Below are positions 226 to 58,296 of a stretch of DNA of 64,000 nt, piece after piece. The number at the start of each line of letters is the position of its first letter. Position 1 is the stretch's first letter. A model generated the notes under the pieces. It did no database searches. It saw only the letters and a program-made list of their open reading frames with translations, and had not been told where the DNA came from. Made by a program: the position numbers and the translations under genes. Location: the IMG/VR virus record IMGVR_UViG_3300032240_001991, positions 186,001 through 250,000 of that record; one strand, given 5' to 3'.

Positions 226-2415
226 GTGACGCCACAGGCTGTAATAGATTCTACAAATTTTAATGATCTATTTGATGATTTAAATTTTACATCTACTCTG
301 AACAGCCTATTGGATAGTGATCTTGGTGTTCAAGATACGCTTAATAAATTAAAAACTCAAAAAGTATTACCTAAAGAAAATCTTAATTCTTTATTAGAAG
401 AAAATAAAGTTATAACAGATAAAACAGTATTTGTTACAAAAAAACCGCAAAAGAAAAGTAAGACTTTATCTAGGTCAATTGCAGTTATATTAGGGTTAAC
501 ATCTTACGCCGGATATTTTAATTTTAATAATACAGAGCTAGTATCTATACCTGTACCTACTCCAGCAGAACAAAAAAAAACTAATCAAATACCTTTTAAG
601 TTTACTAAACCAATTGTAGAAAATACTCGTACAACAACTCATATTGGTCCTAAAGATATTACTTCTATAGAAACAACAGATAATACTCCAGAACTAGTTC
701 AGCCTACGGTCCAAGAAACTCAAGAAGATCAACAACCAAAAATTTTTTTAGATACTCGAGATCCTCAAATATTAATAGACGAAGCTAGAGCATTATTAAT
801 TAGTGGACCTGAAAATTACGAACAAGCAATAACCAATTTACGAAGTGTTATTTTAAGTCAACCGTTAAAAAGTGATTACGCAAAAACTGCACACGAAATG
901 TTAGGATACGCCTACGAAAAATCAAAAAAGTGGGATAAAGCAATGGGAGAGTATTCTAAGTATCTTGCACTTTATCCAGAAGATAACGAAGATAGAACTA
1001 GAGTCAAACAAAGACTAATGGCGCTAGAAATTTTTAAAACTCCTGAAGGGTTTGATATTAATAAAAGCGCAATAAAACAAAAACCAAGAGAAGGCGATAA
1101 ACAGGAACTAAGTGGTTCAATTTCAGAGTATCTTTACTCAGATTCAAACTCAGATGAATTGAAATTCCTGCAATGGAACAATAAACAGATTAATTCGATT
1201 ACTGGAATTAATCTATTATATCAATGGCAACATAATCAATATTCTCTTACATCTAAAATAAGATTAACAGAAGTAAGAGATTTAACCGGTAAGAAAGGAA
1301 ATAGGAATAATTTAGGATTAGCTTATGTTGATTTTGACGATTCTTGGAAAGAGTATAATATAAGAGCAGGAAGACAATCTCCCGAAGCAGGTGCAATAAG
1401 TAAATTTGATGGTCTTTCTACAACAATTTCTTTAAACGATAAAATTAAAATTAAAGCTGCTGCTGGATCCCCTTACGTTGGCCCAGGAAACAACACAAAT
1501 AGAAAATTTATAGGAACAGAAATATCATACGAACGAGGACCATCTTTAACTCTAGGTGGATATTTAAATAGAGGAACTGCAGATGGATTTTTAGAACGAA
1601 TGGCAATTGGCACCGAAGTATGGTATCATAAAGGAGCAAATACAGGAATTCTAAGAACTGAATACGATACCTTATACCACTCATGGAATTCTATAACTTT
1701 TCAAGGAAGTACAGGAGTTAAAGGATATCGTTTATTTGGTGTTTATGAAAAAAGAAGAAGCCCAATGCCATTTGGAGACGTTGGATTAGGAATAGGATTA
1801 TTAAGTCCTGATAAACAGGTATATAATTCAGTAGGAAGTTTGGTCAGTGAATCAGGATTAAGTTCTTCAGAGATCTATCATTACATTTCTGATACAACCC
1901 CAACTGCTTCAGCTTTGGTATTAGGTATTAGTAAGCCTTTAAATGAAGATTGGACCGCTACTTTTAATTGGCAGAAAACAAATTTATCAACTACACCAGG
2001 GTTTGATCTAACTCCAAACTTTGATAGTGTCCCTGTACAGGTAGGACAAAATAATAACTATTCTTATAATTTACATTTAAGAGCGGAAAATTTTAAAATA
2101 GCAGGCAATACATTTGAAATAGTAATGAATCAAACCACTGGACAGATACAAGCTCGATATATTACACTTGCAGACAGTTTTAAATTTAATGGTAAAAAAG
2201 ATATATTTTTTGGTATTTTAAGAGCGGACGAATATGCGCAAAGTTATGGCACAAATAAATCTTTAAGTTTAATCTTAAGAGAAATACATTCTCTAAGTGA
2301 TCAAACCTCAATTGAAACCCAGTACGGTATATCTATAGGTAAAAACATTTATCTAAATCAATCTTTACCTAATACTAATCAAAATTTCTATATTGGAATA
2401 CGTCATGATTTTTAA
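226..2415 (+). CDS. TPR-containing outer-membrane beta-barrel (porin) protein
   Basis: Hydrophobic segment near residues 85-100; TPR-like HEMLGYAYEKSKKWDKAMGEYSKYLALYPE; long C-terminal region of alternating amphipathic strands ending in IGIRHDF (terminal Phe, BAM-type signal). Confidence 0.75.
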   Translation: MTPQAVIDSTNFNDLFDDLNFTSTLNSLLDSDLGVQDTLNKLKTQKVLPKENLNSLLEENKVITDKTVFVTKKPQKKSKTLSRSIAVILGLTSYAGYFNFNNTELVSIPVPTPAEQKKTNQIPFKFTKPIVENTRTTTHIGPKDITSIETTDNTPELVQPTVQETQEDQQPKIFLDTRDPQILIDEARALLISGPENYEQAITNLRSVILSQPLKSDYAKTAHEMLGYAYEKSKKWDKAMGEYSKYLALYPEDNEDRTRVKQRLMALEIFKTPEGFDINKSAIKQKPREGDKQELSGSISEYLYSDSNSDELKFLQWNNKQINSITGINLLYQWQHNQYSLTSKIRLTEVRDLTGKKGNRNNLGLAYVDFDDSWKEYNIRAGRQSPEAGAISKFDGLSTTISLNDKIKIKAAAGSPYVGPGNNTNRKFIGTEISYERGPSLTLGGYLNRGTADGFLERMAIGTEVWYHKGANTGILRTEYDTLYHSWNSITFQGSTGVKGYRLFGVYEKRRSPMPFGDVGLGIGLLSPDKQVYNSVGSLVSESGLSSSEIYHYISDTTPTASALVLGISKPLNEDWTATFNWQKTNLSTTPGFDLTPNFDSVPVQVGQNNNYSYNLHLRAENFKIAGNTFEIVMNQTTGQIQARYITLADSFKFNGKKDIFFGILRADEYAQSYGTNKSLSLILREIHSLSDQTSIETQYGISIGKNIYLNQSLPNTNQNFYIGIRHDF

Positions 2416-2935
2416 AATTTTATCTACAATCTTTCTTTTATTTTTTTCTTATCAAATTTCAGCAGCAGAGTGCACTGCATATGAAAAATTACATCCATTA
2501 TGGCCATTAACCGGAGCTCATTTAAGTACAGGAAAGTGTACGACCTGTGCATATTGCCATATTCCTGCAGGTAACCCTGTATGGATAGGAACTCCAAGAA
2601 TGTGTATTTCCTGTCATAACGGAGATCCTAGATGGACAACAGTAGGAAGGAGCGCCAAACATTTACCTACGTTGTTATTAGATTGCGCAGGTTGTCATAA
2701 TACCTTAGCTTTTAATAACAAAAACGGAATAACTCAGATGATGATACACAATACTGGATACCCTACGGTCATGTGTAAAGGTTGCCATAATGGTATGTAT
2801 ACCAGCTATGGTGCACAAGGAATGTCAAATGATCATCCTAAAACGGTAACTAGGAATGGTGTAAAAATAACCGTAGCTGCTGTTGACTGTAATTATAGTG
2901 GTTGCCATAACCCTAACCGTAATTCATTTAATTAA
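2393..2935 (+). CDS. Secreted multiheme cytochrome c (4 CxxCH + 1 CX4CH)
   Basis: Signal peptide (start may be ATG 2405); motifs CAYCH, CISCH, CAGCH, CKGCH and CNYSGCH. Confidence 0.88.
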   Translation: MEYVMIFKILSTIFLLFFSYQISAAECTAYEKLHPLWPLTGAHLSTGKCTTCAYCHIPAGNPVWIGTPRMCISCHNGDPRWTTVGRSAKHLPTLLLDCAGCHNTLAFNNKNGITQMMIHNTGYPTVMCKGCHNGMYTSYGAQGMSNDHPKTVTRNGVKITVAAVDCNYSGCHNPNRNSFN

Positions 2936-2943
2936 TATAATCT

Positions 2944-2966
2944 ATGTAGATTTTTAAAATCTACAT
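2944..2966. repeat. Perfect 11-bp inverted repeat ATGTAGATTTT-T-AAAATCTACAT
   Basis: Between the two cytochrome genes, 3 nt upstream of TATAAATA; could be an operator or an RNA hairpin. Confidence 0.6.
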
Positions 2967-2969
2967 TTG

Positions 2970-2977
2970 TATAAATA
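2970..2977 (+). promoter_or_regulatory. T4-type late promoter motif TATAAATA
   Basis: Exact match upstream of the GAGGAG RBS (2988-2993) of the heptaheme gene. Confidence 0.45.
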
Positions 2978-3000
2978 ATGTATATTTGAGGAGAAGAATT

Positions 3001-3807
3001 GTGAATAAGTTTAAAAAGTTAATAACTTCAGTCACTGTAATGTTAGGTTTACTTTTTTCTTTTATTAGTGTGCCAACTGTTGTTACAGGAGCATTATTCT
3101 TTTCTCCTTCAGCAGAAGCTGCTGAATGTACGTTATATGAGACTATACACCCTAACTTTCCGTTAACTGGTGCTCACTTATCTACTGGTAAGTGTAGTAC
3201 GTGTGCGAGTTGCCATGCTGGTGGAATATTCCTAGGAACTCCAAAAATCTGTGCAACCTGTCACAACGGAAATCCTAGTGGTCAAATTTCATCTGCTACT
3301 GTAGGGAAATCAGCATTGCATCCTCCAATTGGAACTACAAGTTGCGATTCTTGCCATAATACTACTAGCTTTACTGCTACATGGAAAATGAATCACGCTA
3401 GCGTGAGTGGACAAAGATGCGACAGCTGTCATAACGGTTCCTACACCACTTATGCGGCCATGGGTAAACCAAGAGATCACATTCCAACCACTGCAGACTG
3501 CGGTACTTGCCACGTTACTAAAGACACTAGCTCACACAATAGCGATGCTTGGGGCATGTCGCTTGCTGAAATACATCGTGGTATCACATCAGGCTGTGTT
3601 ACTTGCCATGACGGTGCGCACCATCCAGCACTAGGTAAGATAGACTATGCCCCCGGACATCCTAGCACCAGCGATGCCTGCGAAACTTGCCACAGCATTA
3701 ATAATACTTTCAAATGTGCGTCGTTGATTCATGACAAGATGTTTATGTATTCGTTAAAACAAGGCCTAGCAGGCTTAATTAAAACTTCAGATAAAAATCG
3801 AATATAA
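3001..3807 (+). CDS. Secreted heptaheme cytochrome c
   Basis: GTG start at 3001 follows GAGGAG (ORF track starts 2986). Signal peptide ending AEA-A; seven CxxCH: CASCH, CATCH, CDSCH, CDSCH, CGTCH, CVTCH, CETCH; extra His residues available as distal ligands. Confidence 0.9.
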   Translation: MNKFKKLITSVTVMLGLLFSFISVPTVVTGALFFSPSAEAAECTLYETIHPNFPLTGAHLSTGKCSTCASCHAGGIFLGTPKICATCHNGNPSGQISSATVGKSALHPPIGTTSCDSCHNTTSFTATWKMNHASVSGQRCDSCHNGSYTTYAAMGKPRDHIPTTADCGTCHVTKDTSSHNSDAWGMSLAEIHRGITSGCVTCHDGAHHPALGKIDYAPGHPSTSDACETCHSINNTFKCASLIHDKMFMYSLKQGLAGLIKTSDKNRI

Positions 3808-3821
3808 TCTATCTAATAACG

Positions 3822-3850
3822 GACGCCCCTTTTATGGGGCGTTCTCTTAT
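3822..3850 (+). terminator. Rho-independent terminator
   Basis: GACGCCCC-TTTTAT-GGGGCGTT followed by a T-rich tail, just after the cytochrome genes. Confidence 0.75.
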
Positions 3851-3919
3851 TTCAAATTTTGATTGCTAAAAAGATTGCATCTTTAATAAAATAGTATATA
3901 TTAGCAAAAATAAAAAAAT

Positions 3920-4014
3920 GCCCCTGTAGTTTAATGGTAGAACACCTGTTTTATACACAGGCTTTGGCGCCAGATTAGCGCACAGTGTCGGTTCGAGTCC
4001 GGCCGGGGGTACCA
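3920..4014 (+). tRNA. tRNA-Ile(UAU) with long variable arm
   Basis: Acceptor GCCCCTG/CGGGGGT + A-CCA; anticodon arm CCTGT-TTTATAC-ACAGG; ~25-nt variable region containing a GCGC/GCGC stem; T arm GTCGG-TTCGAGT-CCGGC. Confidence 0.8.
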
Positions 4015-4072
4015 GATTCTTACAATGCTAAAATATTAATTCTTAAATACCAGCACTAGAAAAGGAGTTATC

Positions 4073-4693
4073 ATGCAATCAACTAGATTAACCTGGCAAA
4101 CACAACAAGTTGGTAGGTTTATGTATCCCTATGCCTTTTGGGATAATTTTTTATCAGAAGATGAATTAAAGGCAATTGAACAGTTTTGCCTTACTAAGCC
4201 ATTAATAGATTCTATGACTATTGGCGGAGCAGAACAGGCTAACCTAACAGATGCCAGAAGATCTAAGAGTGTTATCTATGAATTTAATCCAGACATTTTC
4301 TGGATCTTTGATAGAATGAAGAGTATCACTGAGTATGTTAATTCTGAATGTTTTAACTTTGATCTATTAGGCTTTGATTATTTTCAATATGCCGAATATC
4401 AAGGGGAAGGATCACGGTATGAGTTTCATACTGATTTAATCTACGGTAACGATTTACCTCCTTATATGATATTTCCTCGAAAACTATCGTTTACTCTAGT
4501 TCTTAGTGACAATAGCGAATATACTGGTGGGGAATTACAATTTCAACCAGATACTCAAAATCCAGTTACACTTGATCAACGTAGAGGAAGAATTGTAGCA
4601 TTTCCGTCATGGGTACTGCACAGAGTATGTCCGTTAACATCAGGTACTAGAAGATCAATAGTCTGGTGGGCAACTGGACCTAAATTTAGGTAA
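4073..4693 (+). CDS. 2OG-Fe(II) oxygenase (prolyl-hydroxylase/PKHD type)
   Basis: HxD (FHTD), RKLSFTLVL..Y.GGEL, FPSWVLHRV and RRSIVWW..G motifs. Confidence 0.88.
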   Translation: MQSTRLTWQTQQVGRFMYPYAFWDNFLSEDELKAIEQFCLTKPLIDSMTIGGAEQANLTDARRSKSVIYEFNPDIFWIFDRMKSITEYVNSECFNFDLLGFDYFQYAEYQGEGSRYEFHTDLIYGNDLPPYMIFPRKLSFTLVLSDNSEYTGGELQFQPDTQNPVTLDQRRGRIVAFPSWVLHRVCPLTSGTRRSIVWWATGPKFR

Positions 4694-4699
4694 AAAATT

Positions 4700-5212
4700 A
4701 TGAGTAATCTACAGATTTTTAAAAATGTTTTACGACCAGAAACTCTAGCTGCTGTTTTAGAAGAAAGAACAAATTTCTTAGGACAACCAGTTTGGAGATG
4801 TAGCGATCATTTTTGGGGAGAAGAAATTAAAGTTGGCGTCACTGGAGTGGTTACTTCAACGATGTGCAGCCACAGAATAGGTGAAATGGTCAGAAACGAC
4901 ATATTGCACATTATGCCCCCTTGTACTACAATGGCGGTACAACATTATATGTGGCATAAGCATTCCGCAATTAGTAGTCATAATGATTGGGCGTATGCAT
5001 GGGCAGCTACAATTTACTTAAACGAAAACTGGAATTTAGATTGGGGTGGACTGTTCATGTGGCAAGATTCAGATAACGGAGAAATACACGGGCACGTTCC
5101 TGAATACAATAGCATGGCTCTTAATAAAGGCAAGGTTAATCATTTTGTTACTCCACTAAGTCCTTTAGCTCCAGAAAATAGAATTTCCTTACAAATCTGG
5201 GGTAAGGTATAA
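4700..5212 (+). CDS. 2OG-Fe(II) oxygenase
   Basis: HND, TIYLNENWNLDWGGLF, HFVTP and RISLQIW motifs. Confidence 0.8.
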   Translation: MSNLQIFKNVLRPETLAAVLEERTNFLGQPVWRCSDHFWGEEIKVGVTGVVTSTMCSHRIGEMVRNDILHIMPPCTTMAVQHYMWHKHSAISSHNDWAYAWAATIYLNENWNLDWGGLFMWQDSDNGEIHGHVPEYNSMALNKGKVNHFVTPLSPLAPENRISLQIWGKV

Positions 5213-5297
5213 ACTAGTTGACAGTTTAATAGTTTTTTGTTAAAGTACGAGCATGTTAAGACATAGTTAACATGCTCTTTAAAAAGTTTTTATTTTA

Positions 5298-5373
5298 GCT
5301 CCTTTCATCTAGAGGCCTAGGATGTTGCCCTTTCAAGGCAGGAACACGGGTTCGAATCCCGTAAGGAGCGCCA
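5298..5373 (+). tRNA. tRNA-Glu(UUC)
   Basis: Cloverleaf, loop CT-TTC-AA, CCA end. Confidence 0.93.
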
Positions 5374-5380
5374 GTTTATT

Positions 5381-5457
5381 GGCCCGTTAGCTCAATTGGT
5401 TAGAGCACTGGCCTGTCACGTCAGAGGTTACGGGTTCGAGTCCCGTACGGGTCGCCA
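5381..5457 (+). tRNA. tRNA-Asp(GUC)
   Basis: Cloverleaf, loop CT-GTC-AC, G73-CCA. Confidence 0.95.
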
Positions 5458-5463
5458 GTTTGT

Positions 5464-5539
5464 TGGAGTGTAGCTCAGCGGTAGTAGCGTTCGCCTGTTA
5501 AGCGAATGGTCATAGGTTCGAATCCTATCACTCCAGCCA
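5464..5539 (+). tRNA. tRNA-Asn(GUU)
   Basis: Cloverleaf, loop CT-GTT-AA, G73-CCA. Confidence 0.95.
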
Positions 5540-5544
5540 TTTTT

Positions 5545-5620
5545 AGTAGTGTAGCATAGTGGCTAATGCAGCACCTTCATACGGTGTCTATCATCGGTTC
5601 GAGTCCGATCACTACTACCA
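5545..5620 (+). tRNA. tRNA-CAU (elongator Met or lysidine-type Ile2)
   Basis: AGTAGTG/CACTACT acceptor with paired 1-72; loop TT-CAT-AC; CCA. Confidence 0.85.
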
Positions 5621-5625
5621 GTTTT

Positions 5626-5738
5626 AGGATGCCTACAGCAACGTAAATTACTCATGTCAAGAGAGTGGTCGCGGGTTCAATTCCCGCCTAGTCTTAGGAC
5701 TAGTAGCTCAGTTGGTAGAGCACTAAATTGTGTATCCT
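5626..5738 (+). ncRNA. AGGATGC-CTACAGCAA cassette enclosing a circularly permuted tRNA-Asp(GUC) body
   Basis: Outer stem AGGATGC/GTATCCT. Inside, the tRNA 3' half (5651-5694) precedes the 5' half (5697-5724), joined by TA; the rejoined halves give a 72-nt cloverleaf. Confidence 0.8.
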
Positions 5739-5748
5739 GTTTTATTTT

Positions 5749-5826
5749 GCACCGGTGGCGGAGTGGCCCAACGCAAGAGTCTGCAAAACTCTAAAGCCGT
5801 CAGTTCGAATCTGACCCGGTGCTCCA
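5749..5826 (+). tRNA. tRNA-Cys(GCA)
   Basis: Loop CT-GCA-AA, U73-CCA. Confidence 0.93.
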
Positions 5827-5864
5827 TTTCCTTGTATAAGTAATAAAAACTTTTTGAGGAAATT

Positions 5865-7154
5865 ATGAAAGATTATAAAATTCAAGACATTGGGCTAGCC
5901 GCGTGGGGCCATAAAGAAATTGCTATCGCAGAAACTGAAATGCCAGGATTGGTTGCTATTCGAGAAGAATATCGATCACAACAGCCACTAAAAGGTGCTA
6001 GAATTGCAGGGTCATTACATATGACTATTCAGACTGCTGTTTTAATTAAAACTCTAGTAGAACTAGGTGCCAGTGTACGCTGGTCGAGTTGTAATATCTT
6101 TTCAACGCAAGATCATGCAGCAGCCGCAGTTGCAGACTTAGGTATTCCTGTGTTTGCTTGGAAAGGCGAAACAGAAGAAGAATATTGGTGGTGCATTGAA
6201 CAGACGTTAAAAGGACCTGATGGTTGGTCGCCTAACATGATCCTCGACGACGGCCACGACCTTACTTGGTATGTAATGAATAAGTGTCCACAGCTTGTTG
6301 ATAACATTGTAGGAGTTAGTGAAGAGACCACTACAGGAATACATCGTATTATTGAAGCTATTAATAGAGGTGCGTTTCCATTCCGTGCTATTAACGTTAA
6401 CGACAGTGTAACCAAAAGTAAGTTTGATAATTTATACGGTTGTAGAGAAAGCCTAGTTGATGCAATTAAACGCGCAACTGACGTTATGATTGCAGGTAAG
6501 ACCGCAGTCGTATGTGGGTTCGGCGACGTAGGTAAAGGCTCTGCAGAAGCACTACGTGCACTTAGTGCCCAGGTTTGGGTTACTGAAGTTGATCCTATTT
6601 GCGCACTACAAGCAGCAATGGAAGGTTATCGTGTAGTTACTATGGAATATGCTGCTGATAAGGCAGACATTTTTGTAACCGCTACGGGCAATATCAATGT
6701 TATTACACACGACCATATGCAGGCAATGAAAAATAATGCTATTGTTTGCAACATTGGACATTTTGATAACGAAATTGATATTGCTGGATTAAAGAAATAT
6801 ACCTGGGAAAATATTAAACCTCAGGTAGATCATGTCATCTTCCCAAATGGCAAGCGTATTATTATACTTGCTGAAGGTCGATTAGTTAACTTAGGTTGCG
6901 CTACTGGGCACCCTAGTTATGTAATGAGTAACTCATTTACTAATCAAGTATTAGCCCAAGTTGAATTATGGACTAATTCATCTGCTTATGAAAAAGGCAA
7001 ACTTTACATATTGCCAAAACATCTAGATGAAAAGGTAGCTAGGTTGCATTTAGCACAGATAGGTGCTACAATTACTACATTAACTAAGGAACAGGCTGAA
7101 TACATCGGTGTAACAGTTGATGGTCCATTTAAGTCTGATTCTTATAGATATTAA
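5865..7154 (+). CDS. ahcY: S-adenosyl-L-homocysteine hydrolase
   Basis: [67 protein letters not shown] motifs. Confidence 0.97.
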
Positions 7155-7161
7155 AATTTGA

Positions 7162-7244
7162 GCGAGTGTGGTGGAACGGTATACACGACGGTCTTAGAAG
7201 CCGTTGCCTACGGCGTGGAGGTTCAAATCCTCTCACTCGCACCA
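7162..7244 (+). tRNA. tRNA-Leu(UAG)
   Basis: Loop CT-TAG-AA, long V arm, A73-CCA. Confidence 0.93.
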
Positions 7245-7250
7245 AGTTAT

Positions 7251-7324
7251 GCGGAGTTGGCATATGGGTTGTGCTCAAGCCTTCCAAGCTTGCTAAACGG
7301 GTTCGAGTCCCGTACTCCGCTCCA
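7251..7324 (+). tRNA. tRNA-Gly(UCC)
   Basis: Loop CT-TCC-AA, U73-CCA. Confidence 0.92.
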
Positions 7325-7333
7325 GATTTAAAT

Positions 7334-7409
7334 GGCCTCGTAGCTCAGTGGATAGAGCAGTAGCCTTCTAAGCTATTGGTCGCAGGTTCAAATCCTGCCG
7401 AGGTCGCCA
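7334..7409 (+). tRNA. tRNA-Arg(UCU)
   Basis: Loop CT-TCT-AA, CCA. Confidence 0.95.
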
Positions 7410-7423
7410 GTTATAAAAGTTTT

Positions 7424-7479
7424 AGGATGCCTACAGCAAATAAAAAATCAAACTTTGAAATTTGAAAAATGCGCATCCT
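7424..7479 (+). ncRNA. Second AGGATGC-CTACAGCAA cassette, enclosing a Gln(UUG)-anticodon-like hairpin
   Basis: Same 21-nt 5' flank (GTTTTAGGATGCCTACAGCAA) and ATCCTGTTTTATTTT 3' flank as the 5626 copy; outer stem AGGATGC/GCATCCT; inner TCAAA-CTTTGAAA-TTTGA. Confidence 0.7.
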
Positions 7480-7489
7480 GTTTTATTTT

Positions 7490-7563
7490 GCCGGATTGGT
7501 ATAATGGTATTACAGCGGTCTCCAAAACCGTTAACGGGGGTTCAATTCCCTCATCCGGTGCCA
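7490..7563 (+). tRNA. tRNA-Trp(CCA)
   Basis: Loop CT-CCA-AA, G73-CCA. Confidence 0.93.
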
Positions 7564-7583
7564 GACTTAAAAATAAATAATTT

Positions 7584-8288
7584 GTGAATAACATAATTTC
7601 AGAAGGACTAGAATATAACACCAATATTGGATTAAATTATTCTTTCTTATACATGGAAGTTCCTAAGGTATGTTGCACAGTAATTAAAAGAACCCTTCAA
7701 AAAATAGAAGGTTGCGAAAAAGATATAAGCGAAATCCCAATAAAAAGTATGACGACATTAAAAGGAATAAGCAATTCTGGAATGTCTTTTCATGATATAT
7801 TTCATTCTAAAAAATTATTTAAATTTACATTTATCAGGAATCCTTATACACGAATTTTATCTTGCTACCTTGATAAAATTCAATCAAAAAACATTGTGCC
7901 TGATTCGCAACAATATCACGAATATTACGATGCTTTAAATTTAGATTTTAATAAAGAAATTTCTTTTAAAGAATTTTTACTAGCTCTTAAAAAAGACGAA
8001 AATTTAACTAAAAATACGCATTGGACTCCGCAGTTTCTTTTAATTAAAGATTCTAGAATTTCCTATGATTTTATAGGTAGATTTGAAAATTTTGAAAATG
8101 ATTTTAAATTTGTATTAGAACAGATTGGAAAGCCAGACGCAATTATAGCAAATCATTTTCCTGAAAAAATTAGGACTAATGCTAACTTCAGGATAAAAGA
8201 ATTCTACGGAGAGACAGAAAAAGCCTTAGTTTCTGAACTTTACGAATGTGATTTTCGTAGATACAATTATTCAATAGACAGTATTTAA
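7584..8288 (+). CDS. Carbohydrate sulfotransferase (family 2)
   Basis: PAPS-binding-like VPKVCCT, FTFIRNPYTRILSCY, HWTPQ, YDFIGRFENFEND motifs. Confidence 0.85.
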   Translation: MNNIISEGLEYNTNIGLNYSFLYMEVPKVCCTVIKRTLQKIEGCEKDISEIPIKSMTTLKGISNSGMSFHDIFHSKKLFKFTFIRNPYTRILSCYLDKIQSKNIVPDSQQYHEYYDALNLDFNKEISFKEFLLALKKDENLTKNTHWTPQFLLIKDSRISYDFIGRFENFENDFKFVLEQIGKPDAIIANHFPEKIRTNANFRIKEFYGETEKALVSELYECDFRRYNYSIDSI

Positions 8289-9512: not shown

Positions 9513-10408
9513 AGATTTTAATTACACGAAACTGGGTTGATCGATACCAAGATTACCTTTCAGATTCAATATTTCATGGGCTTAAAAGTCTAGGTGAAGA
9601 AGTTGTAGATGTACCGCAACTATGGTACATGTATAAAGATGAGTTTACTTCTGGAAAGCGTAGTTTAGTTAACGACGTATATGGCAGAGGATTTACTTTG
9701 TATTCCTCAATAGATTCTGACAATGTTGATCGAACAGACATAGAACATAAAATACGATCTAGCTACTTTGATATCATCATCTGTTCAAGAGCTGAGTTGC
9801 CAGGACCTTATTATTATCAAATGCTAGAGTCATATCCGCACAATAAAATTATAGTTTTAGATGGTACTGATGAAACTCATCTTTGTGATCAAAATCTTTT
9901 AGGGAAAGCAACATATTTTAAAAGAGAAAATGTTCATCCTTATAATAGATCTGTACATCCTATTTCTTTTTCTTTCCCAAAAGAAAAAATTCAAAAACCT
10001 AATTTTAATAAATCAAAAATGATGGCTGCTCCTGATCCTAGAGCAGCTTCTTCTTTTTCTTTTTTTAAAGAAGAAGATTATTACAATGAATATAATAAAT
10101 CTTGCTTTGGAGTAACAATAAAAAAAGGCGGATGGGACTGTATGCGACATTACGAAATTATGGGTTCGAGAGCCATACCTTTATTTTTAGATATAGATCA
10201 TTGCCCTAATAGTATTCTAACTACGTTACCTAAAAAAGAATTATTTGACATTTTAACTGTATGCCGAGAGAAAGGCGGCGATTGGATTAAAGAAAACATG
10301 GATTATTATTATGAAATGGAAGAAAAGATACATCAACATTTCTTAAAACACTGTACTACAGAAGAATCGGCAAAATATATGTTAGATATTCATCTTAAAA
10401 ATCGTTGA
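9509..10408 (+). CDS. Putative glycosyltransferase-like protein (paralog 2)
   Basis: GGWDCMRHYEIMGSRAIPLF; shares YEMEEKIHQHFLKHCTTE with paralog 1. Confidence 0.5.
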   Translation: MKILITRNWVDRYQDYLSDSIFHGLKSLGEEVVDVPQLWYMYKDEFTSGKRSLVNDVYGRGFTLYSSIDSDNVDRTDIEHKIRSSYFDIIICSRAELPGPYYYQMLESYPHNKIIVLDGTDETHLCDQNLLGKATYFKRENVHPYNRSVHPISFSFPKEKIQKPNFNKSKMMAAPDPRAASSFSFFKEEDYYNEYNKSCFGVTIKKGGWDCMRHYEIMGSRAIPLFLDIDHCPNSILTTLPKKELFDILTVCREKGGDWIKENMDYYYEMEEKIHQHFLKHCTTEESAKYMLDIHLKNR

Positions 10409-10432
10409 CATTTTTTTATATGAATATATAAT
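10405..10432 (+). promoter_or_regulatory. Sigma70-type promoter
   Basis: TTGACA-N16-TATAAT upstream of tRNA-Ser. Confidence 0.65.
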
Positions 10433-11090: not shown

Positions 11091-11167
11091 CGGGAAGTAG
11101 CTCAGCTTGGTAGAGCACCTGCTTTGGGAGCAGGGTGTCGCAGGTTCGAATCCTGTCTTCCCGACCA
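11091..11167 (+). tRNA. tRNA-Pro(UGG)
   Basis: C1-G72, loop TT-TGG-GA, CCA. Confidence 0.95.
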
Positions 11168-11183
11168 ATTATAAGGAAACAAT

Positions 11184-11876
11184 ATGTCGTTAGAAAGATT
11201 ACCCGGAGTAAGTTATGTGTGGCACGAAAGAGACATCTTTACTGTAGTTTACAATAATGGACAATGGGGTAACGGAGTTACCCTGCCTAAAAGCGGAATT
11301 GGATCTACCCTTTGGTATACTGAAAATCTCCGTAAAGAATTACCAAATTTATTAGAAAAATATAATTTAAAAAGAATATACGATGCACCATGTGGTGATA
11401 TGACATGGATGCCCCTAGTATTAGAATCTACTCATTATGAGCAATACATAGGAGCAGATATTGTATCAACACTTATCCAAGATATGAGAGATAAGTTTGA
11501 CAACGATAAATGGTCATTTAGAGTTAATAATATCTGCAATGATCGTTTTCCGGACGCAGATGTTTGGTTTTGTAGAGATTGTTTGTTTCACTTAACTAAC
11601 GAGAATATTCTTAAGGCCCTCAAAAATTTTGTTAATTCTTCTATTCCTTACATACTAACAACTTCACATTGTTTTGATACCGTTGGACCAGATAACGTAG
11701 TATTTCAGGAAAATCAAGACGGATTAAACGGCGATTACAGATTGTTAAATCTAACAGCTAGCCCGTGGAATTTTTCAGAACCGTTAGCTAAAATAGACGA
11801 TACGTATGAAGGGTTTTCTAAAAGATACATGGGTCTTTGGACAAGAGAAAGTGTTGCTAAAGCTCTAAATCTATAA
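11184..11876 (+). CDS. Class I SAM-dependent methyltransferase
   Basis: IYDAPCGD motif I, YIGADIV, DVWFCRDCLFHL. Confidence 0.8.
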   Translation: MSLERLPGVSYVWHERDIFTVVYNNGQWGNGVTLPKSGIGSTLWYTENLRKELPNLLEKYNLKRIYDAPCGDMTWMPLVLESTHYEQYIGADIVSTLIQDMRDKFDNDKWSFRVNNICNDRFPDADVWFCRDCLFHLTNENILKALKNFVNSSIPYILTTSHCFDTVGPDNVVFQENQDGLNGDYRLLNLTASPWNFSEPLAKIDDTYEGFSKRYMGLWTRESVAKALNL

Positions 11877-11922
11877 TAAATACTTTAGTGTTAAGTTAAC
11901 ACAAATAAAAAGGAGATTTACA

Positions 11923-12129
11923 ATGGAAACTCTAAAAGGTGCGGTAAAGTCAAAAACAGTTTGGTTAGGTGTATTAGTAGCTGCTCTTTCAGCTCTTCAG
12001 TCTGGACTAAATGGAGTAGGTATTACTCCTGAACAACTAGGTGTTGTTGGCCCGCTTCTAGGTGTTGTAATTGTTTGGTTACGTTCTATAACAACTGGGT
12101 CTTTAGCTGATAAGAACACATCTAAATAA
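11923..12129 (+). CDS. Small two-TM membrane protein (holin-like)
   Basis: KSKTVW start, two hydrophobic helices, basic tail; strong AAGGAG RBS. Confidence 0.5.
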   Translation: METLKGAVKSKTVWLGVLVAALSALQSGLNGVGITPEQLGVVGPLLGVVIVWLRSITTGSLADKNTSK

Positions 12130-12147
12130 TTTGAGTTTACTGCTATT

Positions 12148-12183
12148 AAAGGGTTAGATCGCAAGGTCTAACCCTTTATTTGT
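12148..12183 (+). terminator. Rho-independent terminator
   Basis: AAAGGGTTAGATC-GCAA-GGTCTAACCCTTT followed by T-rich sequence. Confidence 0.8.
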
Positions 12184-12188
12184 TTATT

Positions 12189-12264
12189 GCCCCTGTAACT
12201 TAACGGATAGAGTGCTTGGCTTCGAACCAAGAAGTTGTGGGTTCAAATCCTGCCAGGGGCGCCA
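12189..12264 (+). tRNA. tRNA-Arg(UCG)
   Basis: Loop CT-TCG-AA, CCA. Confidence 0.88.
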
Positions 12265-12274
12265 TAAATACAAG

Positions 12275-12733
12275 ATGCGTATTACAGAAATACTAGAAGG
12301 TAAATTTGATTATTCAGTAAAGGATTATGAAAACGTACCTTTTGATCCTACAGATTCGTCTGGTCGACTAAGTGTGGGAATTAGTTCAAAAAATCCTAAC
12401 TTAGGACCTCACGAAGGCAAGATACTAAACTTAATGCTTAAAGGTATGAAGCCTGCTGCTGTTATTACACAAAAAGAATTAAATCAATATTTTGCTCCTT
12501 ACATACATGCAAAGAAAATTGTTCTAATTGGTCCTTTTCCTATTACTAGAGGAACACAAACAGACTTTATTGTAACTCTGCCTGGAGAGGAATGGAGAGG
12601 CCGCAAATTATCAAAGATTTGGCCAAAATTACACGCTGCTACTGATCCTAAAGAAATTAAATTGATACATGCTAAAATTGGAAAACTCTTAGGCTATCCA
12701 AAAGAATCAATCAGACATTTCATTGATAAATAA
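12275..12733 (+). CDS. Hypothetical protein (MRITEILE N-terminus, possible internal head protein)
   Basis: ORF-track start lies inside tRNA-Arg; ATG 12275 is the likely start. Confidence 0.6.
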   Translation: MRITEILEGKFDYSVKDYENVPFDPTDSSGRLSVGISSKNPNLGPHEGKILNLMLKGMKPAAVITQKELNQYFAPYIHAKKIVLIGPFPITRGTQTDFIVTLPGEEWRGRKLSKIWPKLHAATDPKEIKLIHAKIGKLLGYPKESIRHFIDK

Positions 12734-12855
12734 TCTCGCCATCCAACCTTTCGGTATAGGACAAGTAGTATGACTACGGCGTATGCAGGGATCTAGAGAC
12801 AGTGCGCACTGTTCTACGATTGACGAACCGAACCAACACTTTTAAGGAGACCTAA

Positions 12856-13215
12856 ATGGCTGTTTACTGGGGATATCATTTGATGCTGGATTGCTCGGGT
12901 TGCAACGATAATATAAAAGATCGTGAGCAAATTTATCGTTTTACCAAAGAATTAGTTAAGCGCATCGACATGACTGCTTTTGGCGAACCAATTATTGAAT
13001 TTTTGCTTCCTGGTGATCCAAAAGAAGGTTACAGCTTAATGCAGCTCATTACCACCAGTAATATTTGTGCACATTTTGTTAACCCTGACAATACTGCCTA
13101 CATCGATATTTTTAGTTGCAAAGATTATAATATAGAAGAAGCCAAGGCTGTAGTCTCTGAATTTTTTGCTCCAACTAAAATGAGAACTAATTACATTACC
13201 CGCAATGCTGATTAA
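12856..13215 (+). CDS. speD: S-adenosylmethionine decarboxylase proenzyme-like (pyruvoyl type)
   Basis: GYHLMLDCSGC, GYSLMQLITTSNICAHF (cleavage-site region), YIDIFSCK. Confidence 0.8.
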   Translation: MAVYWGYHLMLDCSGCNDNIKDREQIYRFTKELVKRIDMTAFGEPIIEFLLPGDPKEGYSLMQLITTSNICAHFVNPDNTAYIDIFSCKDYNIEEAKAVVSEFFAPTKMRTNYITRNAD

Positions 13216-13221
13216 CGTATA

Positions 13222-13299
13222 GCTCCTATCGTCTAGACGGGCCCAGGACTTTCGATTCTCAGTCGGATAACACAGGTTCGAATCCTGTTAGGAGCACCA
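13222..13299 (+). tRNA. tRNA-Glu(CUC)
   Basis: GCTCCTA/TAGGAGC acceptor, loop TT-CTC-AG, CCA. Confidence 0.8.
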
Positions 13300-13306
13300 A
13301 AGATAA

Positions 13307-13936
13307 ATGGAAAACAAGTATATACTGTTTGATATAGGAGCAAATACTGGAACCGATAGCTTGGAAAAAACTAAGCTTAATCCTTATGTTGAAACATATG
13401 CTTTTGAACCAACTCCTTATCTAACCCAATACCTAGCATGGCACAGTAAAGAATTCTCTAATAGATACCATATCATTCCGCACGCTGTTAGTAACTTTGA
13501 CGGAATTTCTAAGTTTAATATTGGAATTGACTGGGGTTGCAGTTCTTTAAATGAAATTAGTGATAACATCAACGAAATATGGCCTGGGTGGCCCGGTGGG
13601 CCAGAATTTCGTACAATAGAAATCATTGACGTTGGAGTAATTAGATTAGATACCTGGTTTAGAAGAAATAATTTAAACATTGATAAAATTGATTTCTTTC
13701 ATTGCGACACGCAAGGCAGTGATTTAAAAGTCCTTCAAGGAATGGGAGATTATATAGAGCTTATTCAAGAAGGAGTAGTAGAGTGTGCTAGAGACGAAAA
13801 TTCTAAATTATATAAAGAAAACCATACTGAACAAGAAATGATTGAATTTTTGTTTTCAAAAGGGTTTGACATTCCTAGAAGAGAATGGAATGACCAATAT
13901 GGTTGCGAAATTAATGTATTCTTTAAAAAACGATAA
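13307..13936 (+). CDS. FkbM-family methyltransferase
   Basis: FDIGANTG, YAFEPTP, IRLD, HCDTQGSDLKVLQG. Confidence 0.88.
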   Translation: MENKYILFDIGANTGTDSLEKTKLNPYVETYAFEPTPYLTQYLAWHSKEFSNRYHIIPHAVSNFDGISKFNIGIDWGCSSLNEISDNINEIWPGWPGGPEFRTIEIIDVGVIRLDTWFRRNNLNIDKIDFFHCDTQGSDLKVLQGMGDYIELIQEGVVECARDENSKLYKENHTEQEMIEFLFSKGFDIPRREWNDQYGCEINVFFKKR

Positions 13937-13940
13937 TTTC

Positions 13941-13969
13941 TTGACATAATAGCAAGTATGATATATACT
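13941..13969 (+). promoter_or_regulatory. Sigma70-type promoter
   Basis: TTGACA-N17-TATACT. Confidence 0.75.
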
Positions 13970-13991
13970 ATATACATTCTAAGGAGTTTAA

Positions 13992-14210
13992 ATGAGTAAG
14001 GGAAGTCGAGCAAGGCCACTATCAGTTTCTCAGGCAGAATTTGATAAGAACTGGGAAGAAATTTTTGGAGGAATGGGTTCTTGCCCTTGCGGCCGTAGCC
14101 CAATTAAACAGTGTGTAGGGTGGCACAATCTTAACGAAGAACAACTGGCTAGAGCAAAAGAAAACTGGGATAAAAGAGAAAAGTTACGTAATGACAAGAG
14201 TTGTAGTTAA
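13992..14210 (+). CDS. Small protein with CDGSH-like Fe-S/Zn motif
   Basis: CPCGRSPIKQCVGWH has the spacing of the CDGSH 3Cys-1His site. Confidence 0.55.
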   Translation: MSKGSRARPLSVSQAEFDKNWEEIFGGMGSCPCGRSPIKQCVGWHNLNEEQLARAKENWDKREKLRNDKSCS

Positions 14211-43838: not shown

Positions 43839-43864
43839 ATATCTGAGAGTTAAAAGGAAATAGA

Positions 43865-58229: not shown

Positions 58230-58296
58230 TATTGCCTAAATAAAGTTGTACAATATGTACATGTCATCCACGACAATAACTCGGAGAATTAAAATA

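What the first reader, a model, noticed from the sequence alone, without database searches (positions are those of the whole stretch)
5626..5738. Circularly permuted tRNA-Asp(GUC) inside an RNA cassette
Seen: 5651-5694 is a tRNA 3' half (CTC-ATGTCAA-GAGAG-TGGTC-GCGGG-TTCAATT-CCCGC-CTAGTCT). It is followed, after only TA, by the 5' half 5697-5724 (GGACTAG-TA-GCTC-AGTTGGTA-GAGC-A-CT). Rejoining CT|CTC gives a perfect CTCTC/GAGAG anticodon stem and exactly 72 nt, and the acceptor strands are complementary, so both halves belong to one tRNA. Both break-point ends are flanked by AAATT, and the whole is clamped by AGGATGC/GTATCCT. There is no CCA and the acceptor end is closed by a tiny loop. Established: permuted tRNA genes are known from a few algae and an archaeon (BHB-spliced); I know none from phages or bacteria. 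Inference: it is either a precursor that is ligated to a circle and then opened, or a non-chargeable, end-less tRNA mimic (decoy for Asp/Q-anticodon nucleases or tRNA sensors). U at position 73 rather than the Asp determinant G73 favours the mimic.
Basis: partly seen in the sequence, partly recalled or inferred. Interest (0 to 1): 0.9.

Follow-up and report, generated by a model that had tools for sequence, protein, structure and literature searches.

The report
Phage Y RNA shaped like tRNA
The "permuted tRNA-Asp" is real as a structure, but it is a phage copy of a known class of tRNA-mimicking small RNAs (YrlA-type Y RNAs), here in an apparently undescribed variant that sits in tRNA gene clusters and seems to pair with a Ro60-like protein of the DUF2828 family.

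Summary
Window 5626-5738 folds as a basal stem carrying a complete tRNA-shaped module: a T arm, a capped acceptor stem, a D arm, a 5-nt variable loop, and an anticodon-like arm whose 5' strand is interrupted at tRNA positions 28|29.

It is not a new kind of gene. Rfam's YrlA model matches at 49.9 bits (E 1e-10), below its 69-bit cut-off. The YrlA literature already describes these RNAs as resembling circularly permuted tRNAs with closed acceptor stems.

It is not a tRNA-Asp. A sister phage contig carries the same RNA with GCU in place of GUC, and about 140 relatives carry more than 20 different loop triplets.

The window RNA belongs to a subfamily of 43 distinct viral sequences with a 5' UACAGCAA motif and a 3' CUGUU motif.
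- Covariation is strong: 92.7% of cells paired, against 63% in shuffles.
- 23 of 38 copies lie beside tRNA genes.
- Within 3 kb, the neighbouring ring protein is DUF2828+DUF7788 in 12 cases and canonical TROVE in 1. Other YrlA-like RNAs show 0 and 82 (p = 2e-14).

The window's own 326-kb contig encodes such a DUF2828 protein about 53 kb away, and its predicted fold best matches the three solved Ro60 structures.

Best reading: a Y-RNA-type tether or decoy working with a Ro60-like ring protein. No function was tested. I rate it a new variant of a known kind, of moderate interest.

The parts
5218..5246 (+). Promoter-like site (TTGACA, 17-nt spacer, TAAAGT, with TG) upstream of the tRNA-Glu/Asp/Asn/Met - Y RNA - tRNA-Cys cluster. 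This is weak evidence only.
   Evidence: Consensus scan. The region holds 27 promoter-like sites against 15.5 expected, so this one is no more than suggestive.
5545..5620 (+). tRNA-Met(CAT), ending 5 nt before the basal stem. Its 3' processing would define the 5' end of the Y RNA (inferred).
   Evidence: ARAGORN; Rfam.
5626..5632 (+). Basal stem, 5' strand (AGGATGC). Pairs with 5732-5738.
   Evidence: In the 31-sequence alignment the five outer pairs are 95.5% paired, each with changes on both sides. In the sister contig G5631 is A, turning a G.U pair into A-U.
5634..5641 (+). UACAGCAA motif directly after the basal stem. Proposed to be part of the docking site for the DUF2828-type Ro60-like protein.
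   Evidence: The motif defines the 43-sequence subfamily. Near-identical motifs (UACUGCA, UUCAGCAA, UACAGCA) occur in RNAs found independently, directly upstream of DUF2828 genes. Motif against neighbouring protein family: p = 2.4e-14.
5642..5650 (+). A/U-rich spacer (CGTAAATTA), probably single-stranded.
   Evidence: Length and sequence vary among relatives. The AATT/AATT pairing with 5725-5729 is not kept in the sister contig.
5651..5663 (+). Anticodon-like hairpin: CTC (tRNA positions 29-31), a 7-nt loop ATGTCAA (32-38), then GAG (39-41).
   Evidence: Pair statistics in the subfamily: 29-41 70%, 30-40 93%, 31-39 98%. Loop: U33 93%, A37 and A38 91%, and 20 different 34-36 triplets. Chen 2014 calls this hairpin 'V'.
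5664..5665 (+). AG (positions 42-43), pairing with CT at 5723-5724 (positions 28-27). With the hairpin this makes a 5-bp anticodon stem nicked at 28|29.
   Evidence: 27-43: CG 16, AU 8, GC 5. 28-42: GC 22, UA 5, CG 2, AU 1. Together 96.8% paired. The alternative partner, the base 5' of position 29, pairs in only 28% of sequences.
5666..5670 (+). Five-base variable loop TGGTC. C48 can form the Levitt pair with G15.
   Evidence: NGGTC is the commonest form in the family.
5671..5687 (+). T arm (GCGGG-TTCAATT-CCCGC).
   Evidence: Rfam YrlA alignment. 100% paired in the alignment. Two double compensatory changes against the sister contig.
5688..5703 (+). Capped acceptor stem: CTAGTC, UUAG cap, GACTAG. 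It has no free 3' end and no CCA.
   Evidence: 98.1% paired, and all five counted pairs show changes on both sides. Caps across the family are enriched for GNRA/UNCG.
5704..5722 (+). U8-A9, the D arm (GCTC-AGTTGGTA-GAGC) and A26.
   Evidence: Rfam YrlA alignment. The D stem is invariant in the alignment.
5723..5724 (+). CT (positions 27-28), partner of 5664-5665.
5725..5731 (+). A-rich 3' spacer (AAATTGT).
   Evidence: variable among relatives.
5732..5741 (+). Basal stem 3' strand (GTATCCT, 5732-5738), overlapping the conserved CUGUU tail (5737-5741).
   Evidence: RNAs next to DUF2828 genes end in ...AUCCUGUU.
5749..5826 (+). tRNA-Cys(GCA). RNase P cleavage at its 5' end would release the 3' end of the Y RNA (inferred).
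   Evidence: ARAGORN.

Best explanation
Window 5626-5738 encodes a phage Y RNA of the YrlA type, a small non-coding RNA that is a closed, non-chargeable tRNA mimic.

Shown:
- It has the YrlA core: T arm, capped acceptor stem, D arm and the tRNA tertiary-pair nucleotides.
- It also has an anticodon-like arm. The RNA chain enters and leaves at tRNA positions 28|29 and runs into a basal stem.
- The whole structure is kept by covariation in dozens of phage relatives.
- The RNA belongs to a subfamily whose basal module (stem, 5' UACAGCAA, 3' CUGUU) co-occurs with genes for DUF2828+DUF7788 proteins. These are homologous to TROVE/Ro60 and are predicted to have the Ro60 fold.
- The same phage contig encodes one such protein.

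Inferred:
- The RNA is co-transcribed with the tRNA cluster. It is released when the tRNA-processing enzymes cut out tRNA-Met on one side and tRNA-Cys on the other.
- Its basal module docks on the phage's Ro60-like ring protein.
- Its tRNA-shaped module engages a tRNA-recognising partner such as a nuclease, a repair enzyme or a modification enzyme. This is how Y RNAs tether Ro60 to PNPase in Deinococcus, Salmonella and Thermus phage phiLo.
- In a phage with 20 or more tRNA genes the likely job is surveillance, repair or protection of tRNAs during infection.
For: Identity:
- Rfam YrlA (RF02553) scores 49.9 bits, E 1.3e-10, with the T arm, acceptor hairpin and D arm aligned.
- The literature describes YrlA as a permuted-tRNA-like Ro60 partner, present in phages.

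Structure:
- 92.7% of pair cells are standard pairs against 63.1% in shuffles. The covariation score is 0.769 against 0.187. The split helix is 96.8% paired.
- Anchor-based counts on 98 other YrlA-like RNAs give 27-43 90% and 28-42 95% paired.

Not a tRNA-Asp:
- The sister contig has GCU in the loop together with compensatory T-stem changes.

Subfamily and context:
- 43 distinct sequences were found in viral contigs.
- 23 of 38 have a tRNA gene within 400 nt, against 3 of 50 for the canonical type.

Protein partner:
- Within 3 kb, UACNGCAA RNAs have DUF2828 in 12 cases and TROVE in 1. Other YrlA-like RNAs have 0 and 82. Fisher p = 2.4e-14.
- Starting from the protein instead, strong RNA matches lie directly upstream of DUF2828 genes in 12 of 79 other loci.
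- Profile comparison of DUF2828 against TROVE: 98.7% probability, E 2.3e-16, 395 columns.
- The window's own contig encodes an intact 466-aa DUF2828+DUF7788 protein (L352). Its model (pLDDT 83) has Ro60 structures 9KOP, 1YVP and 2NVO as its three best PDB matches.
- The cultured Sinorhizobium phage phiM12 has the same RNA type 1.3 kb upstream of a DUF2828 gene.
Against: - No expression, binding or function was tested here.
- The element misses Rfam's gathering score (49.9 against 69).
- It lacks the GNCGAA Ro60-binding motif.
- It is not next to its presumed protein. The DUF2828 gene is about 53 kb away, and no Y RNA match lies beside that gene.
- Only 12 of 38 subfamily RNAs have DUF2828 within 3 kb. 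Only about 15% of the DUF2828 loci fetched have a strong RNA match. The link is therefore statistical, and many loci are too short to judge.
- The UACNGCAA motif was part of the search pattern, so its invariance in the alignment is partly by construction. The protein-first search is the more independent check.
- The partner of the tRNA-like module is unknown even for canonical YrlA.
Confidence: 0.75

Rival explanations
1. A free-standing tRNA decoy or sponge that works without any Ro60-like protein. The capped, full tRNA shape with an anticodon-like loop would soak up a host tRNA-targeting factor, such as an anticodon nuclease, a tRNA sensor or a modification enzyme, and so protect the phage's real tRNAs.
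For: - The anticodon-like loop keeps U33 and A37/A38 while the 34-36 triplet varies freely. That pattern would suit decoys tuned to different nucleases.
- The RNA sits inside tRNA clusters.
- The closed ends would resist exonucleases.
- 25 of 38 subfamily RNAs have no ring-protein gene within 3 kb.
- Phage tRNAs are discussed in the literature as counter-measures to anticodon nucleases (PMC7824862).
Against: - The basal stem and its flanking motifs are conserved and track the DUF2828 family. A pure decoy would not need that.
- The window's phage does encode the protein.
- No nuclease target can be named.
- Close sister phages differ in the triplet, GUC against GCU.
Confidence: 0.15
2. A true permuted tRNA gene. 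The transcript would be joined at 28|29 into a circle, then opened at the acceptor cap by RNase P/Z and given CCA, producing a working tRNA-Asp.
For: - The 3' half lies before the 5' half and rejoining gives exactly 72 nt.
- A 7-position acceptor helix is present.
- M. smegmatis YrlA, which has a 7-bp acceptor stem, is cut by RNase P and receives CCA in vivo (Chen 2014).
Against: - No bulge-helix-bulge at the ends. The 4-bp AATT/AATT helix has single-base mismatches rather than 3-nt bulges, and it is lost in the sister contig.
- No splicing endonuclease or RNA ligase was found among about 60 window ORFs scanned.
- The sister contig has GCU with the same acceptor stem and a short variable loop, which fits neither Asp nor Ser identity.
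- U73 in place of the G73 that I recall as the tRNA-Asp discriminator. The base is read from the sequence; the identity rule is from memory.
- Acceptor caps across the family are stable GNRA/UNCG tetraloops.
- The phage already has a normal tRNA-Asp(GTC) at 5381-5457.
Confidence: 0.04
3. A scar of tandem tRNA duplication and deletion: the 3' half of one tRNA-Asp fused to the 5' half of the next, with no function.
For: - The element lies in a tRNA array that contains a tRNA-Asp(GTC).
- Wang 2018 cite a model in which YrlA arose long ago from dimeric tRNA transcripts.
Against: - The same architecture recurs in more than 130 distinct viral sequences, with compensatory changes in every helix, including the basal stem and the split anticodon stem.
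- The window's tRNAs all encode CCA, but the element has none.
- The sister contig shows double compensatory changes.
Confidence: 0.01

Closest known systems
YrlA (Y RNA-like A; Rfam RF02553) of Salmonella Typhimurium, Mycobacterium smegmatis and mycobacteriophages (Chen et al. 2014, PMC4201824; Wang et al. 2018, bioRxiv 10.1101/312249, PDB 6CU1)
   Same: - Conserved T and D arms with the tRNA tertiary nucleotides.
- An acceptor-like stem closed by a loop.
- 5' and 3' ends leaving through the anticodon-stem side into a basal stem.
- A hairpin upstream of the T arm (their 'V').
- Presence in phages.
- Mycobacteriophage Myrna has a close relative (81% identity over 77 nt, loop CUGUCAA) inside its tRNA array.
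   Different: - The 5' motif is UACAGCAA rather than GNCGAA(N)G.
- The associated ring protein is DUF2828+DUF7788 rather than a Pfam-TROVE Ro60.
- The RNA is about 53 kb from that gene rather than within 4 kb.
- It scores below Rfam's cut-off.
- My pair counts say the 'V' hairpin stacks on pairs 27-43 and 28-42 to form a 5-bp anticodon stem with a 7-nt U33...A37A38 loop. The papers read here do not say this. They state that Salmonella YrlA lacks an anticodon loop.
Ro60-Y RNA RNPs: Deinococcus radiodurans Rsr-Yrn1-PNPase (RYPER) and Thermus phage phiLo Ro60-Yrl1/Yrl2 (PMC12135203, PDB 9KOP, 9L5Y)
   Same: - A ring protein built of HEAT repeats plus a vWA domain, together with a small RNA whose stem docks on it.
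- Encoded by a phage.
- The window phage's DUF2828 protein model matches 9KOP, 1YVP and 2NVO best.
   Different: - The protein here is a distant paralogue: 14-17% identity to the solved Ro60 structures and 18% in the profile comparison with phage TROVE proteins. Pfam files it as two DUFs.
- The phiLo RNAs were identified by a CGAA bulge.
- No PNPase link was seen here.
Circularly permuted tRNA genes of Cyanidioschyzon merolae, other algae and Thermofilum pendens (Soma et al. 2007 and others, as cited by Wang 2018)
   Same: The gene order is 3' half then 5' half. The acceptor end is initially closed. The termini pair next to the anticodon stem.
   Different: - Those precursors carry a bulge-helix-bulge, are cut and ligated by the splicing machinery, and become real, chargeable tRNAs with fixed identity.
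- Here no BHB is present, the 'anticodon' drifts between sister phages, and the cap looks selected to stay closed.
Other tRNA mimics: the tmRNA tRNA-like domain and the TYMV 3' tRNA-like structure
   Same: An L-shaped tRNA-like fold used for something other than decoding.
   Different: Those have a free CCA end and are aminoacylated (Wang 2018). This RNA has no free acceptor end.

Membership tests
YrlA / bacterial Y RNA (RF02553) | Conserved T arm and D arm carrying the tRNA tertiary-interaction nucleotides | tested here: met
   The cmscan alignment matches GCGGGUUCAAUUCCCGC and UAGCUCAGUUGGUAGAGC. U8, A14, G15-C48, G18G19, U54U55C56 and A58 are all present. The D stem is invariant and the T stem 100% paired in relatives.
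YrlA / bacterial Y RNA (RF02553) | Acceptor-like stem between the T and D arms closed by a loop, with no free CCA | tested here: met
   5688-5703 forms a 6-bp stem with a UUAG cap. 98.1% paired with covariation.
YrlA / bacterial Y RNA (RF02553) | 5' and 3' ends pair into a stem that leaves from the anticodon-stem side | tested here: met
   Basal stem 5626-5632 / 5732-5738. Its outer five pairs are 95.5% paired, each with changes on both sides.
YrlA / bacterial Y RNA (RF02553) | GNCGAA(N0-1)G motif near the 5' end (the proposed Ro60 contact) | tested here: not met
   Absent from 5621-5650. UACAGCAA stands there instead.
YrlA / bacterial Y RNA (RF02553) | Conserved YUAY just 5' of the V region | tested here: inconclusive
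   CUAC at 5633-5636 overlaps the UACAGCAA motif, and UUAC at 5648-5651 abuts the hairpin. Which of the two, if either, is homologous cannot be decided.
YrlA / bacterial Y RNA (RF02553) | Encoded within about 4 kb of a Ro60 (TROVE) gene on the same strand | tested here: not met
   No TROVE or DUF2828 ORF is present in the 64-kb window (hmmsearch E > 0.25). The contig's DUF2828 gene is about 53 kb away.
YrlA / bacterial Y RNA (RF02553) | Reaches Rfam's gathering score | tested here: not met
   49.9 bits against 69. Not listed in the gathering-threshold scan.
YrlA / bacterial Y RNA (RF02553) | Bound by the Ro60 orthologue in vivo | not testable with these tools
   Needs RIP or gel-shift assays.
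Circularly permuted tRNA gene (BHB-processed) | 3' half encoded upstream of the 5' half of one tRNA | tested here: met
Circularly permuted tRNA gene (BHB-processed) | Bulge-helix-bulge (3-nt bulge, 4-bp helix, 3-nt bulge) formed by leader and trailer at the junction | tested here: not met
   Only an A.A mismatch followed by a 4-bp AATT/AATT helix is possible. That helix is not kept in the sister contig, which has AAAAT.
Circularly permuted tRNA gene (BHB-processed) | Conserved tRNA identity (anticodon and identity elements) of the mature product | tested here: not met
   GUC in the window against GCU in the sister contig, with an identical acceptor stem. Twenty or more triplets across the subfamily.
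Circularly permuted tRNA gene (BHB-processed) | Circular intermediate and a mature tRNA with CCA | not testable with these tools
   Needs RNA-seq or RT-PCR across the junction.
Ro60 / TROVE family (the presumed protein partner, L352:5953-7353) | Match to the Pfam TROVE domain (PF05731) | tested here: not met
   Pfam gives DUF2828 (1.1e-33) and DUF7788 (1.7e-53) and no TROVE hit.
Ro60 / TROVE family (the presumed protein partner, L352:5953-7353) | Homology to TROVE proteins, and a HEAT-repeat ring plus a vWA domain with DxSGS | tested here: met
   hhalign 98.7% probability, E 2.3e-16 over 395 columns, with the DVSGSM motif aligned. The three best Foldseek matches are Ro60 structures 9KOP, 1YVP and 2NVO, TM 0.45-0.61.

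The most novel reading that the evidence does not exclude
DUF2828+DUF7788 proteins and UACAGCAA-type RNAs form a second, so far undescribed Ro60/Y-RNA-like ribonucleoprotein system of large phages.
- Its RNA would be a complete, closed tRNA replica, anticodon arm included.
- The RNA is usually wired into the phage tRNA cluster rather than placed beside its protein.
- The system would act on the tRNA pool during infection, through surveillance or repair of cleaved tRNAs or by decoying host anticodon nucleases. The freely varying 'anticodon' triplet would then reflect the target.
Probability: 0.4. Interest if true: 0.65.

Novelty: new variant of a known kind. Interest (0 to 1): 0.45.

Why it matters
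The headline claim, a permuted tRNA in a phage, is already known biology. It is YrlA, first reported in 2014.

Three results here go beyond the papers I could read.
- A distinct subfamily of these tRNA mimics is common in uncultured large phages and sits inside tRNA clusters. Standard annotation misses it or mislabels it. Myrna's copy is annotated 'tRNA-Asp'.
- Its docking module tracks a different ring protein, DUF2828+DUF7788. This gives a large 'domain of unknown function' family a concrete, testable role as a Ro60 paralogue with an RNA partner. Chen et al. searched only genomes annotated with TROVE, so they would have missed it. A full-text search for DUF2828 found no paper linking it to Y RNAs.
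- The hairpin called the 'variable arm' behaves as an anticodon arm, so the mimicry is more complete than described.

What YrlA's tRNA-like domain binds is an open question. Phage phiM12 in Sinorhizobium meliloti, a cultured phage-host pair, offers a system in which to ask it.

Tried and rejected
- **tRNA callers.** ARAGORN and Rfam at gathering thresholds do not call the element. It appears only in E-value mode.
- **Ro60 in the window.** HMMs built from phage TROVE and DUF2828 proteins found nothing in six-frame ORFs of the window (E > 0.25). Pfam on about 60 window ORFs found no TROVE, RNA ligase, splicing endonuclease or CCA-adding enzyme.
- **Bulge-helix-bulge at the 28|29 junction.** Not present. 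The AAATT/AAATT symmetry and an alternative GCAA/UUGU helix are both broken by one substitution in the sister contig, so these spacers are probably unpaired.
- **Exoribonuclease link.** An Rv2179c-like 3'-5' exoribonuclease lies 1 kb upstream of the DUF2828 gene in L352, but in only 3 of 80 DUF2828 loci. It is not a general partner.
- **Sequence search of the DUF2828 profile against PDB.** Only weak vWA hits and no Ro60. Profile-profile comparison and fold comparison were needed.
- **First viral scan.** A pattern spanning the T loop to the D arm returned mostly ordinary tandem tRNAs. Closed-acceptor filtering and two refined patterns were needed.
- **Queuosine (TGT) signal.** I estimated by hand, from the counts, whether the loops are enriched for the UGU signal. 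The result was about 0.3 observed against about 0.2 expected from column frequencies, which is too weak to claim.
- **Literature.** Two Wolin-lab reviews (PMC10870794, PMC6047535) are not held, so I cannot exclude that they mention the anticodon-arm reading or tRNA-array placement.
- **MAFFT register.** The alignment of the inner two basal-stem pairs is mis-registered (48% paired, helix 2). This is an alignment artefact of variable spacers, not evidence against the stem.
Full report
**1. Observation**

The window is part of a large T4-like phage contig of about 36% GC. It carries 20 tRNA genes, phage tail and baseplate-type proteins, and a family B DNA polymerase. The element lies between tRNA-Met (5545-5620) and tRNA-Cys (5749-5826).

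- A tRNA 3' half occupies 5651-5694, TA follows, and a 5' half occupies 5697-5724. Together they make 72 nt.
- CT at 5723-5724 completes a CTCTC/GAGAG stem. The acceptor strands are complementary. There is no CCA.
- The clamp AGGATGC/GTATCCT is at 5626-5632 and 5732-5738.

The minimum-energy fold reproduces the T arm, the acceptor hairpin, the D arm and the clamp (z = -2.86). ARAGORN and Rfam at gathering thresholds do not report the element.

**2. What it matches**

With Rfam's E-value thresholds the region matches YrlA (RF02553, 'Y RNA-like') at 49.9 bits, E 1.3e-10. That is below the 69-bit cut-off. The T arm, closed acceptor hairpin and D arm align well. The outer part aligns badly.

YrlA RNAs are partners of the bacterial Ro60 protein. 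Chen et al. 2014 found them next to Ro60 genes in 254 bacterial species and 22 phages, and showed that they mimic tRNA. Wang et al. 2018 solved the Salmonella tRNA-like domain.

**3. Relatives**

Pattern scans of viral contigs, filtered for a closed acceptor hairpin, gave about 100 distinct YrlA-like RNAs.
- 83 of 103 had a TROVE/Ro60 ORF in the fetched locus, mostly within 500 nt.
- Ten of ten checked with Pfam were TROVE, seven of them with a vWA-type domain as well.
- The window's own contig, IMGVR_UViG_3300032240_001991 (326,658 bp), was among the hits but without such a gene nearby.

Several RNAs lacking a TROVE neighbour shared the window's unusual 5' part: a stem followed directly by UAC-N-GCAA. 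A third scan for that motif gave 43 distinct sequences. One is a sister contig of 328 kb (L269).

**4. Structure by covariation**

On a 31-sequence alignment of the subfamily, 92.7% of pair cells are standard pairs. The value is 63.1% in shuffles and 28-42% when partners are slid. The covariation score is 0.769 against 0.187.

The key point is the split helix.
- Bases 27-28, just after the D arm, pair with 42-43. This helix is 96.8% paired, with CG/AU/GC and GC/UA/CG/AU variants.
- The 3-bp hairpin upstream supplies pairs 29-31/39-41.
- The alternative, in which the hairpin extends by itself, is paired in only 28% of sequences.
- The loop is 7 nt, with U33 in 93% and A37 and A38 in 91%.
- The same pattern holds in 98 other YrlA-like RNAs, most of them TROVE-linked (27-43 90%, 28-42 95%).

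So the hairpin that Chen et al. call 'V' behaves as an anticodon arm, with the chain entering and leaving at 28|29.

**5. Not a tRNA-Asp and not a precursor**

The sister contig differs at 10 positions inside the element.
- The loop triplet is GCU in place of GUC.
- Two T-stem pairs have changed on both sides.
- One basal-stem G.U pair has become A-U.
- One change destroys the AAATT symmetry.
- The acceptor stem is unchanged.

Other evidence points the same way.
- Across relatives the triplet takes more than 20 values.
- Of 99 four-base acceptor caps, 57 are GNRA or UNCG tetraloops (p = 4e-49 against chance). That speaks for a cap selected to stay closed.
- No bulge-helix-bulge can be drawn.
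- No splicing endonuclease or RNA ligase was found among about 60 window ORFs.
- The phage has an ordinary tRNA-Asp(GTC) at 5381-5457.

One caveat remains. M. smegmatis YrlA, which has a 7-bp acceptor stem, is opened by RNase P and receives CCA. Cleavage at the cap therefore cannot be excluded for the window RNA.

**6. The protein partner**

Weak TROVE-HMM hits next to some subfamily RNAs turned out to be DUF2828 (PF11443) plus DUF7788 (PF25043) proteins.

Association with the RNA:
- Within 3 kb, UACNGCAA-type RNAs have DUF2828 in 12 cases, TROVE in 1 and neither in 25.
- All other YrlA-like RNAs have TROVE in 82 cases, DUF2828 in 0 and neither in 17. Fisher p = 2.4e-14.
- Starting from the protein, 80 DUF2828 loci were fetched. 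A covariance model of the RNA (R1) found strong matches directly upstream of the gene in 12 of the 79 loci other than the seed's own.
- Those RNAs share ...UUAGGAU-n3-UACAGCAA at the 5' end and AUCCUGUU at the 3' end, very like the window RNA.

Relationship to Ro60:
- The DUF2828 family is homologous to TROVE proteins. hhalign gives 98.7% probability, E 2.3e-16, over 395 columns including the vWA DxSGS motif.

In the window's own phage:
- One of the 80 loci (L352) is the window's own contig, at 131,383-144,720. It encodes an intact 466-aa DUF2828+DUF7788 protein.
- Its AlphaFold model has pLDDT 83 and pTM 0.78.
- The three best PDB matches are the three Ro60 structures: Thermus phage 9KOP, Xenopus 1YVP and Deinococcus 2NVO, with E 3e-10 to 8e-8.
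- The window's AdoHcy hydrolase gene maps to position 191,865 of the same record. The RNA therefore lies about 53 kb from this gene.

**7. Context**
- Subfamily RNAs lie within 400 nt of a tRNA gene in 23 of 38 cases. The figure is 3 of 50 for the canonical GNCGAA type.
- Mycobacteriophage Myrna has a close relative inside its tRNA array. Its 5' part is annotated 'tRNA-Asp'.
- The cultured Sinorhizobium phage phiM12 has the RNA (R1 77 bits, loop AUGUCAA), then a Macro-domain gene, then a DUF2828 gene 1.3 kb downstream.
- A scan of one genome for each of 185,579 bacterial and archaeal species found only 10 matches, all in metagenome-assembled genomes. The subfamily is essentially viral.

**8. 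Mechanism**

Shown: the fold, its conservation, and the statistical link to a Ro60-like protein that this phage encodes.

Inferred:
- The RNA is co-transcribed with the tRNA cluster. A promoter-like site lies at 5218-5246, which is weak evidence.
- It is released by tRNA processing on both sides.
- The basal module docks on the ring protein.
- The tRNA-shaped module recruits or distracts a tRNA-recognising factor. This follows the way known Y RNAs tether Ro60 to PNPase.

The actual partner and benefit are unknown. A Ro-independent decoy role is the main rival.

**9. Novelty and score**

The element is a new variant of a known kind.

Three things appear to be new, as far as I could check.
- The UACAGCAA subfamily.
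- Its preference for tRNA clusters.
- Its pairing with DUF2828/DUF7788 proteins.

The checks behind this are limited. Chen et al. searched only TROVE-annotated genomes. No paper found by full-text search links DUF2828 to Y RNAs. Two reviews could not be read.

Interest: 0.45.

Noticed in passing
L272:3473-3599 (Mycobacterium phage Myrna, NC_011273 about 95,149-95,275): Gene 166, annotated 'tRNA-Asp' (record 95,152-95,223), is really the 5' two-thirds of a YrlA-like RNA with loop CUGUCAA. ARAGORN finds no tRNA there, and model R1 scores the site at 63 bits. This looks like a database misannotation.
   Followed up: partly
L364:2966-3086 and 3089-5794 (Sinorhizobium phage phiM12, KF381361): A cultured phage has the same RNA type, unannotated. 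It is followed by a Macro-domain (Appr-1''-p processing) gene and then a DUF2828 gene. The Macro domain hints at an RNA-repair context.
   Followed up: partly
L352:4427-4960, 11158-11700 and 11678-12367 (window's own contig, about 53 kb upstream of the window): An Rv2179c-like 3'-5' exoribonuclease lies 1 kb upstream of the DUF2828 gene, but this holds in only 3 of 80 DUF2828 loci. The same locus carries heme oxygenase and ferredoxin-dependent bilin reductase genes, which I recall as typical cyanophage auxiliary genes.
   Followed up: partly
L262:6903-7150; L282:1521-1851; L347:1118-2186; L362:1880-2330; L321:5995-6106 and 10306-10427: Several phage contigs carry two copies of the Y RNA, some in tandem. 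This recalls the YrlA/YrlB pairs of bacteria.
   Followed up: no
L297:5561-5735; L339:5746-5929: Two DUF2828-adjacent RNAs are 175-184 nt long and align to model R1 end to end. By eye, the extra roughly 60 nt lies in the acceptor-cap region.
   Followed up: no
window 3920-4014: tRNA-Ile(TAT) is called at 95 nt, about 20 nt longer than normal. It may contain an insertion or an unusually long arm.
   Followed up: no
window 2393-3807: Two adjacent ORFs match multi-haem cytochrome c7/c3 families. This seems an unusual cargo for a phage.
   Followed up: no
window 4073-8288 and 11184-15340: Metabolic genes are interleaved with the tRNA genes: two 2OG-Fe(II) oxygenases, S-adenosylhomocysteine hydrolase, a sulfotransferase, methyltransferases (one of FkbM type) and a PfkB-family kinase.
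   Followed up: no
window 25431-25961, 58246-59139 and 61567-62421: A PTPS/QueD-like ORF, a GTP cyclohydrolase I and a weak radical-SAM ORF are present. These may be parts of a pterin or 7-deazaguanine pathway. The Y RNA loop has U33-G34-U35, the TGT recognition triplet, but the sister contig does not.
   Followed up: partly
window 23314-23913, 28310-29840 and 43026-46138: Chaperone, protease and Fe-S genes are present: ClpP, an ABC ATPase plus SufBD, DnaJ and a ClpB-like double AAA+ protein. A ClpX-like gene lies in L352.
   Followed up: no
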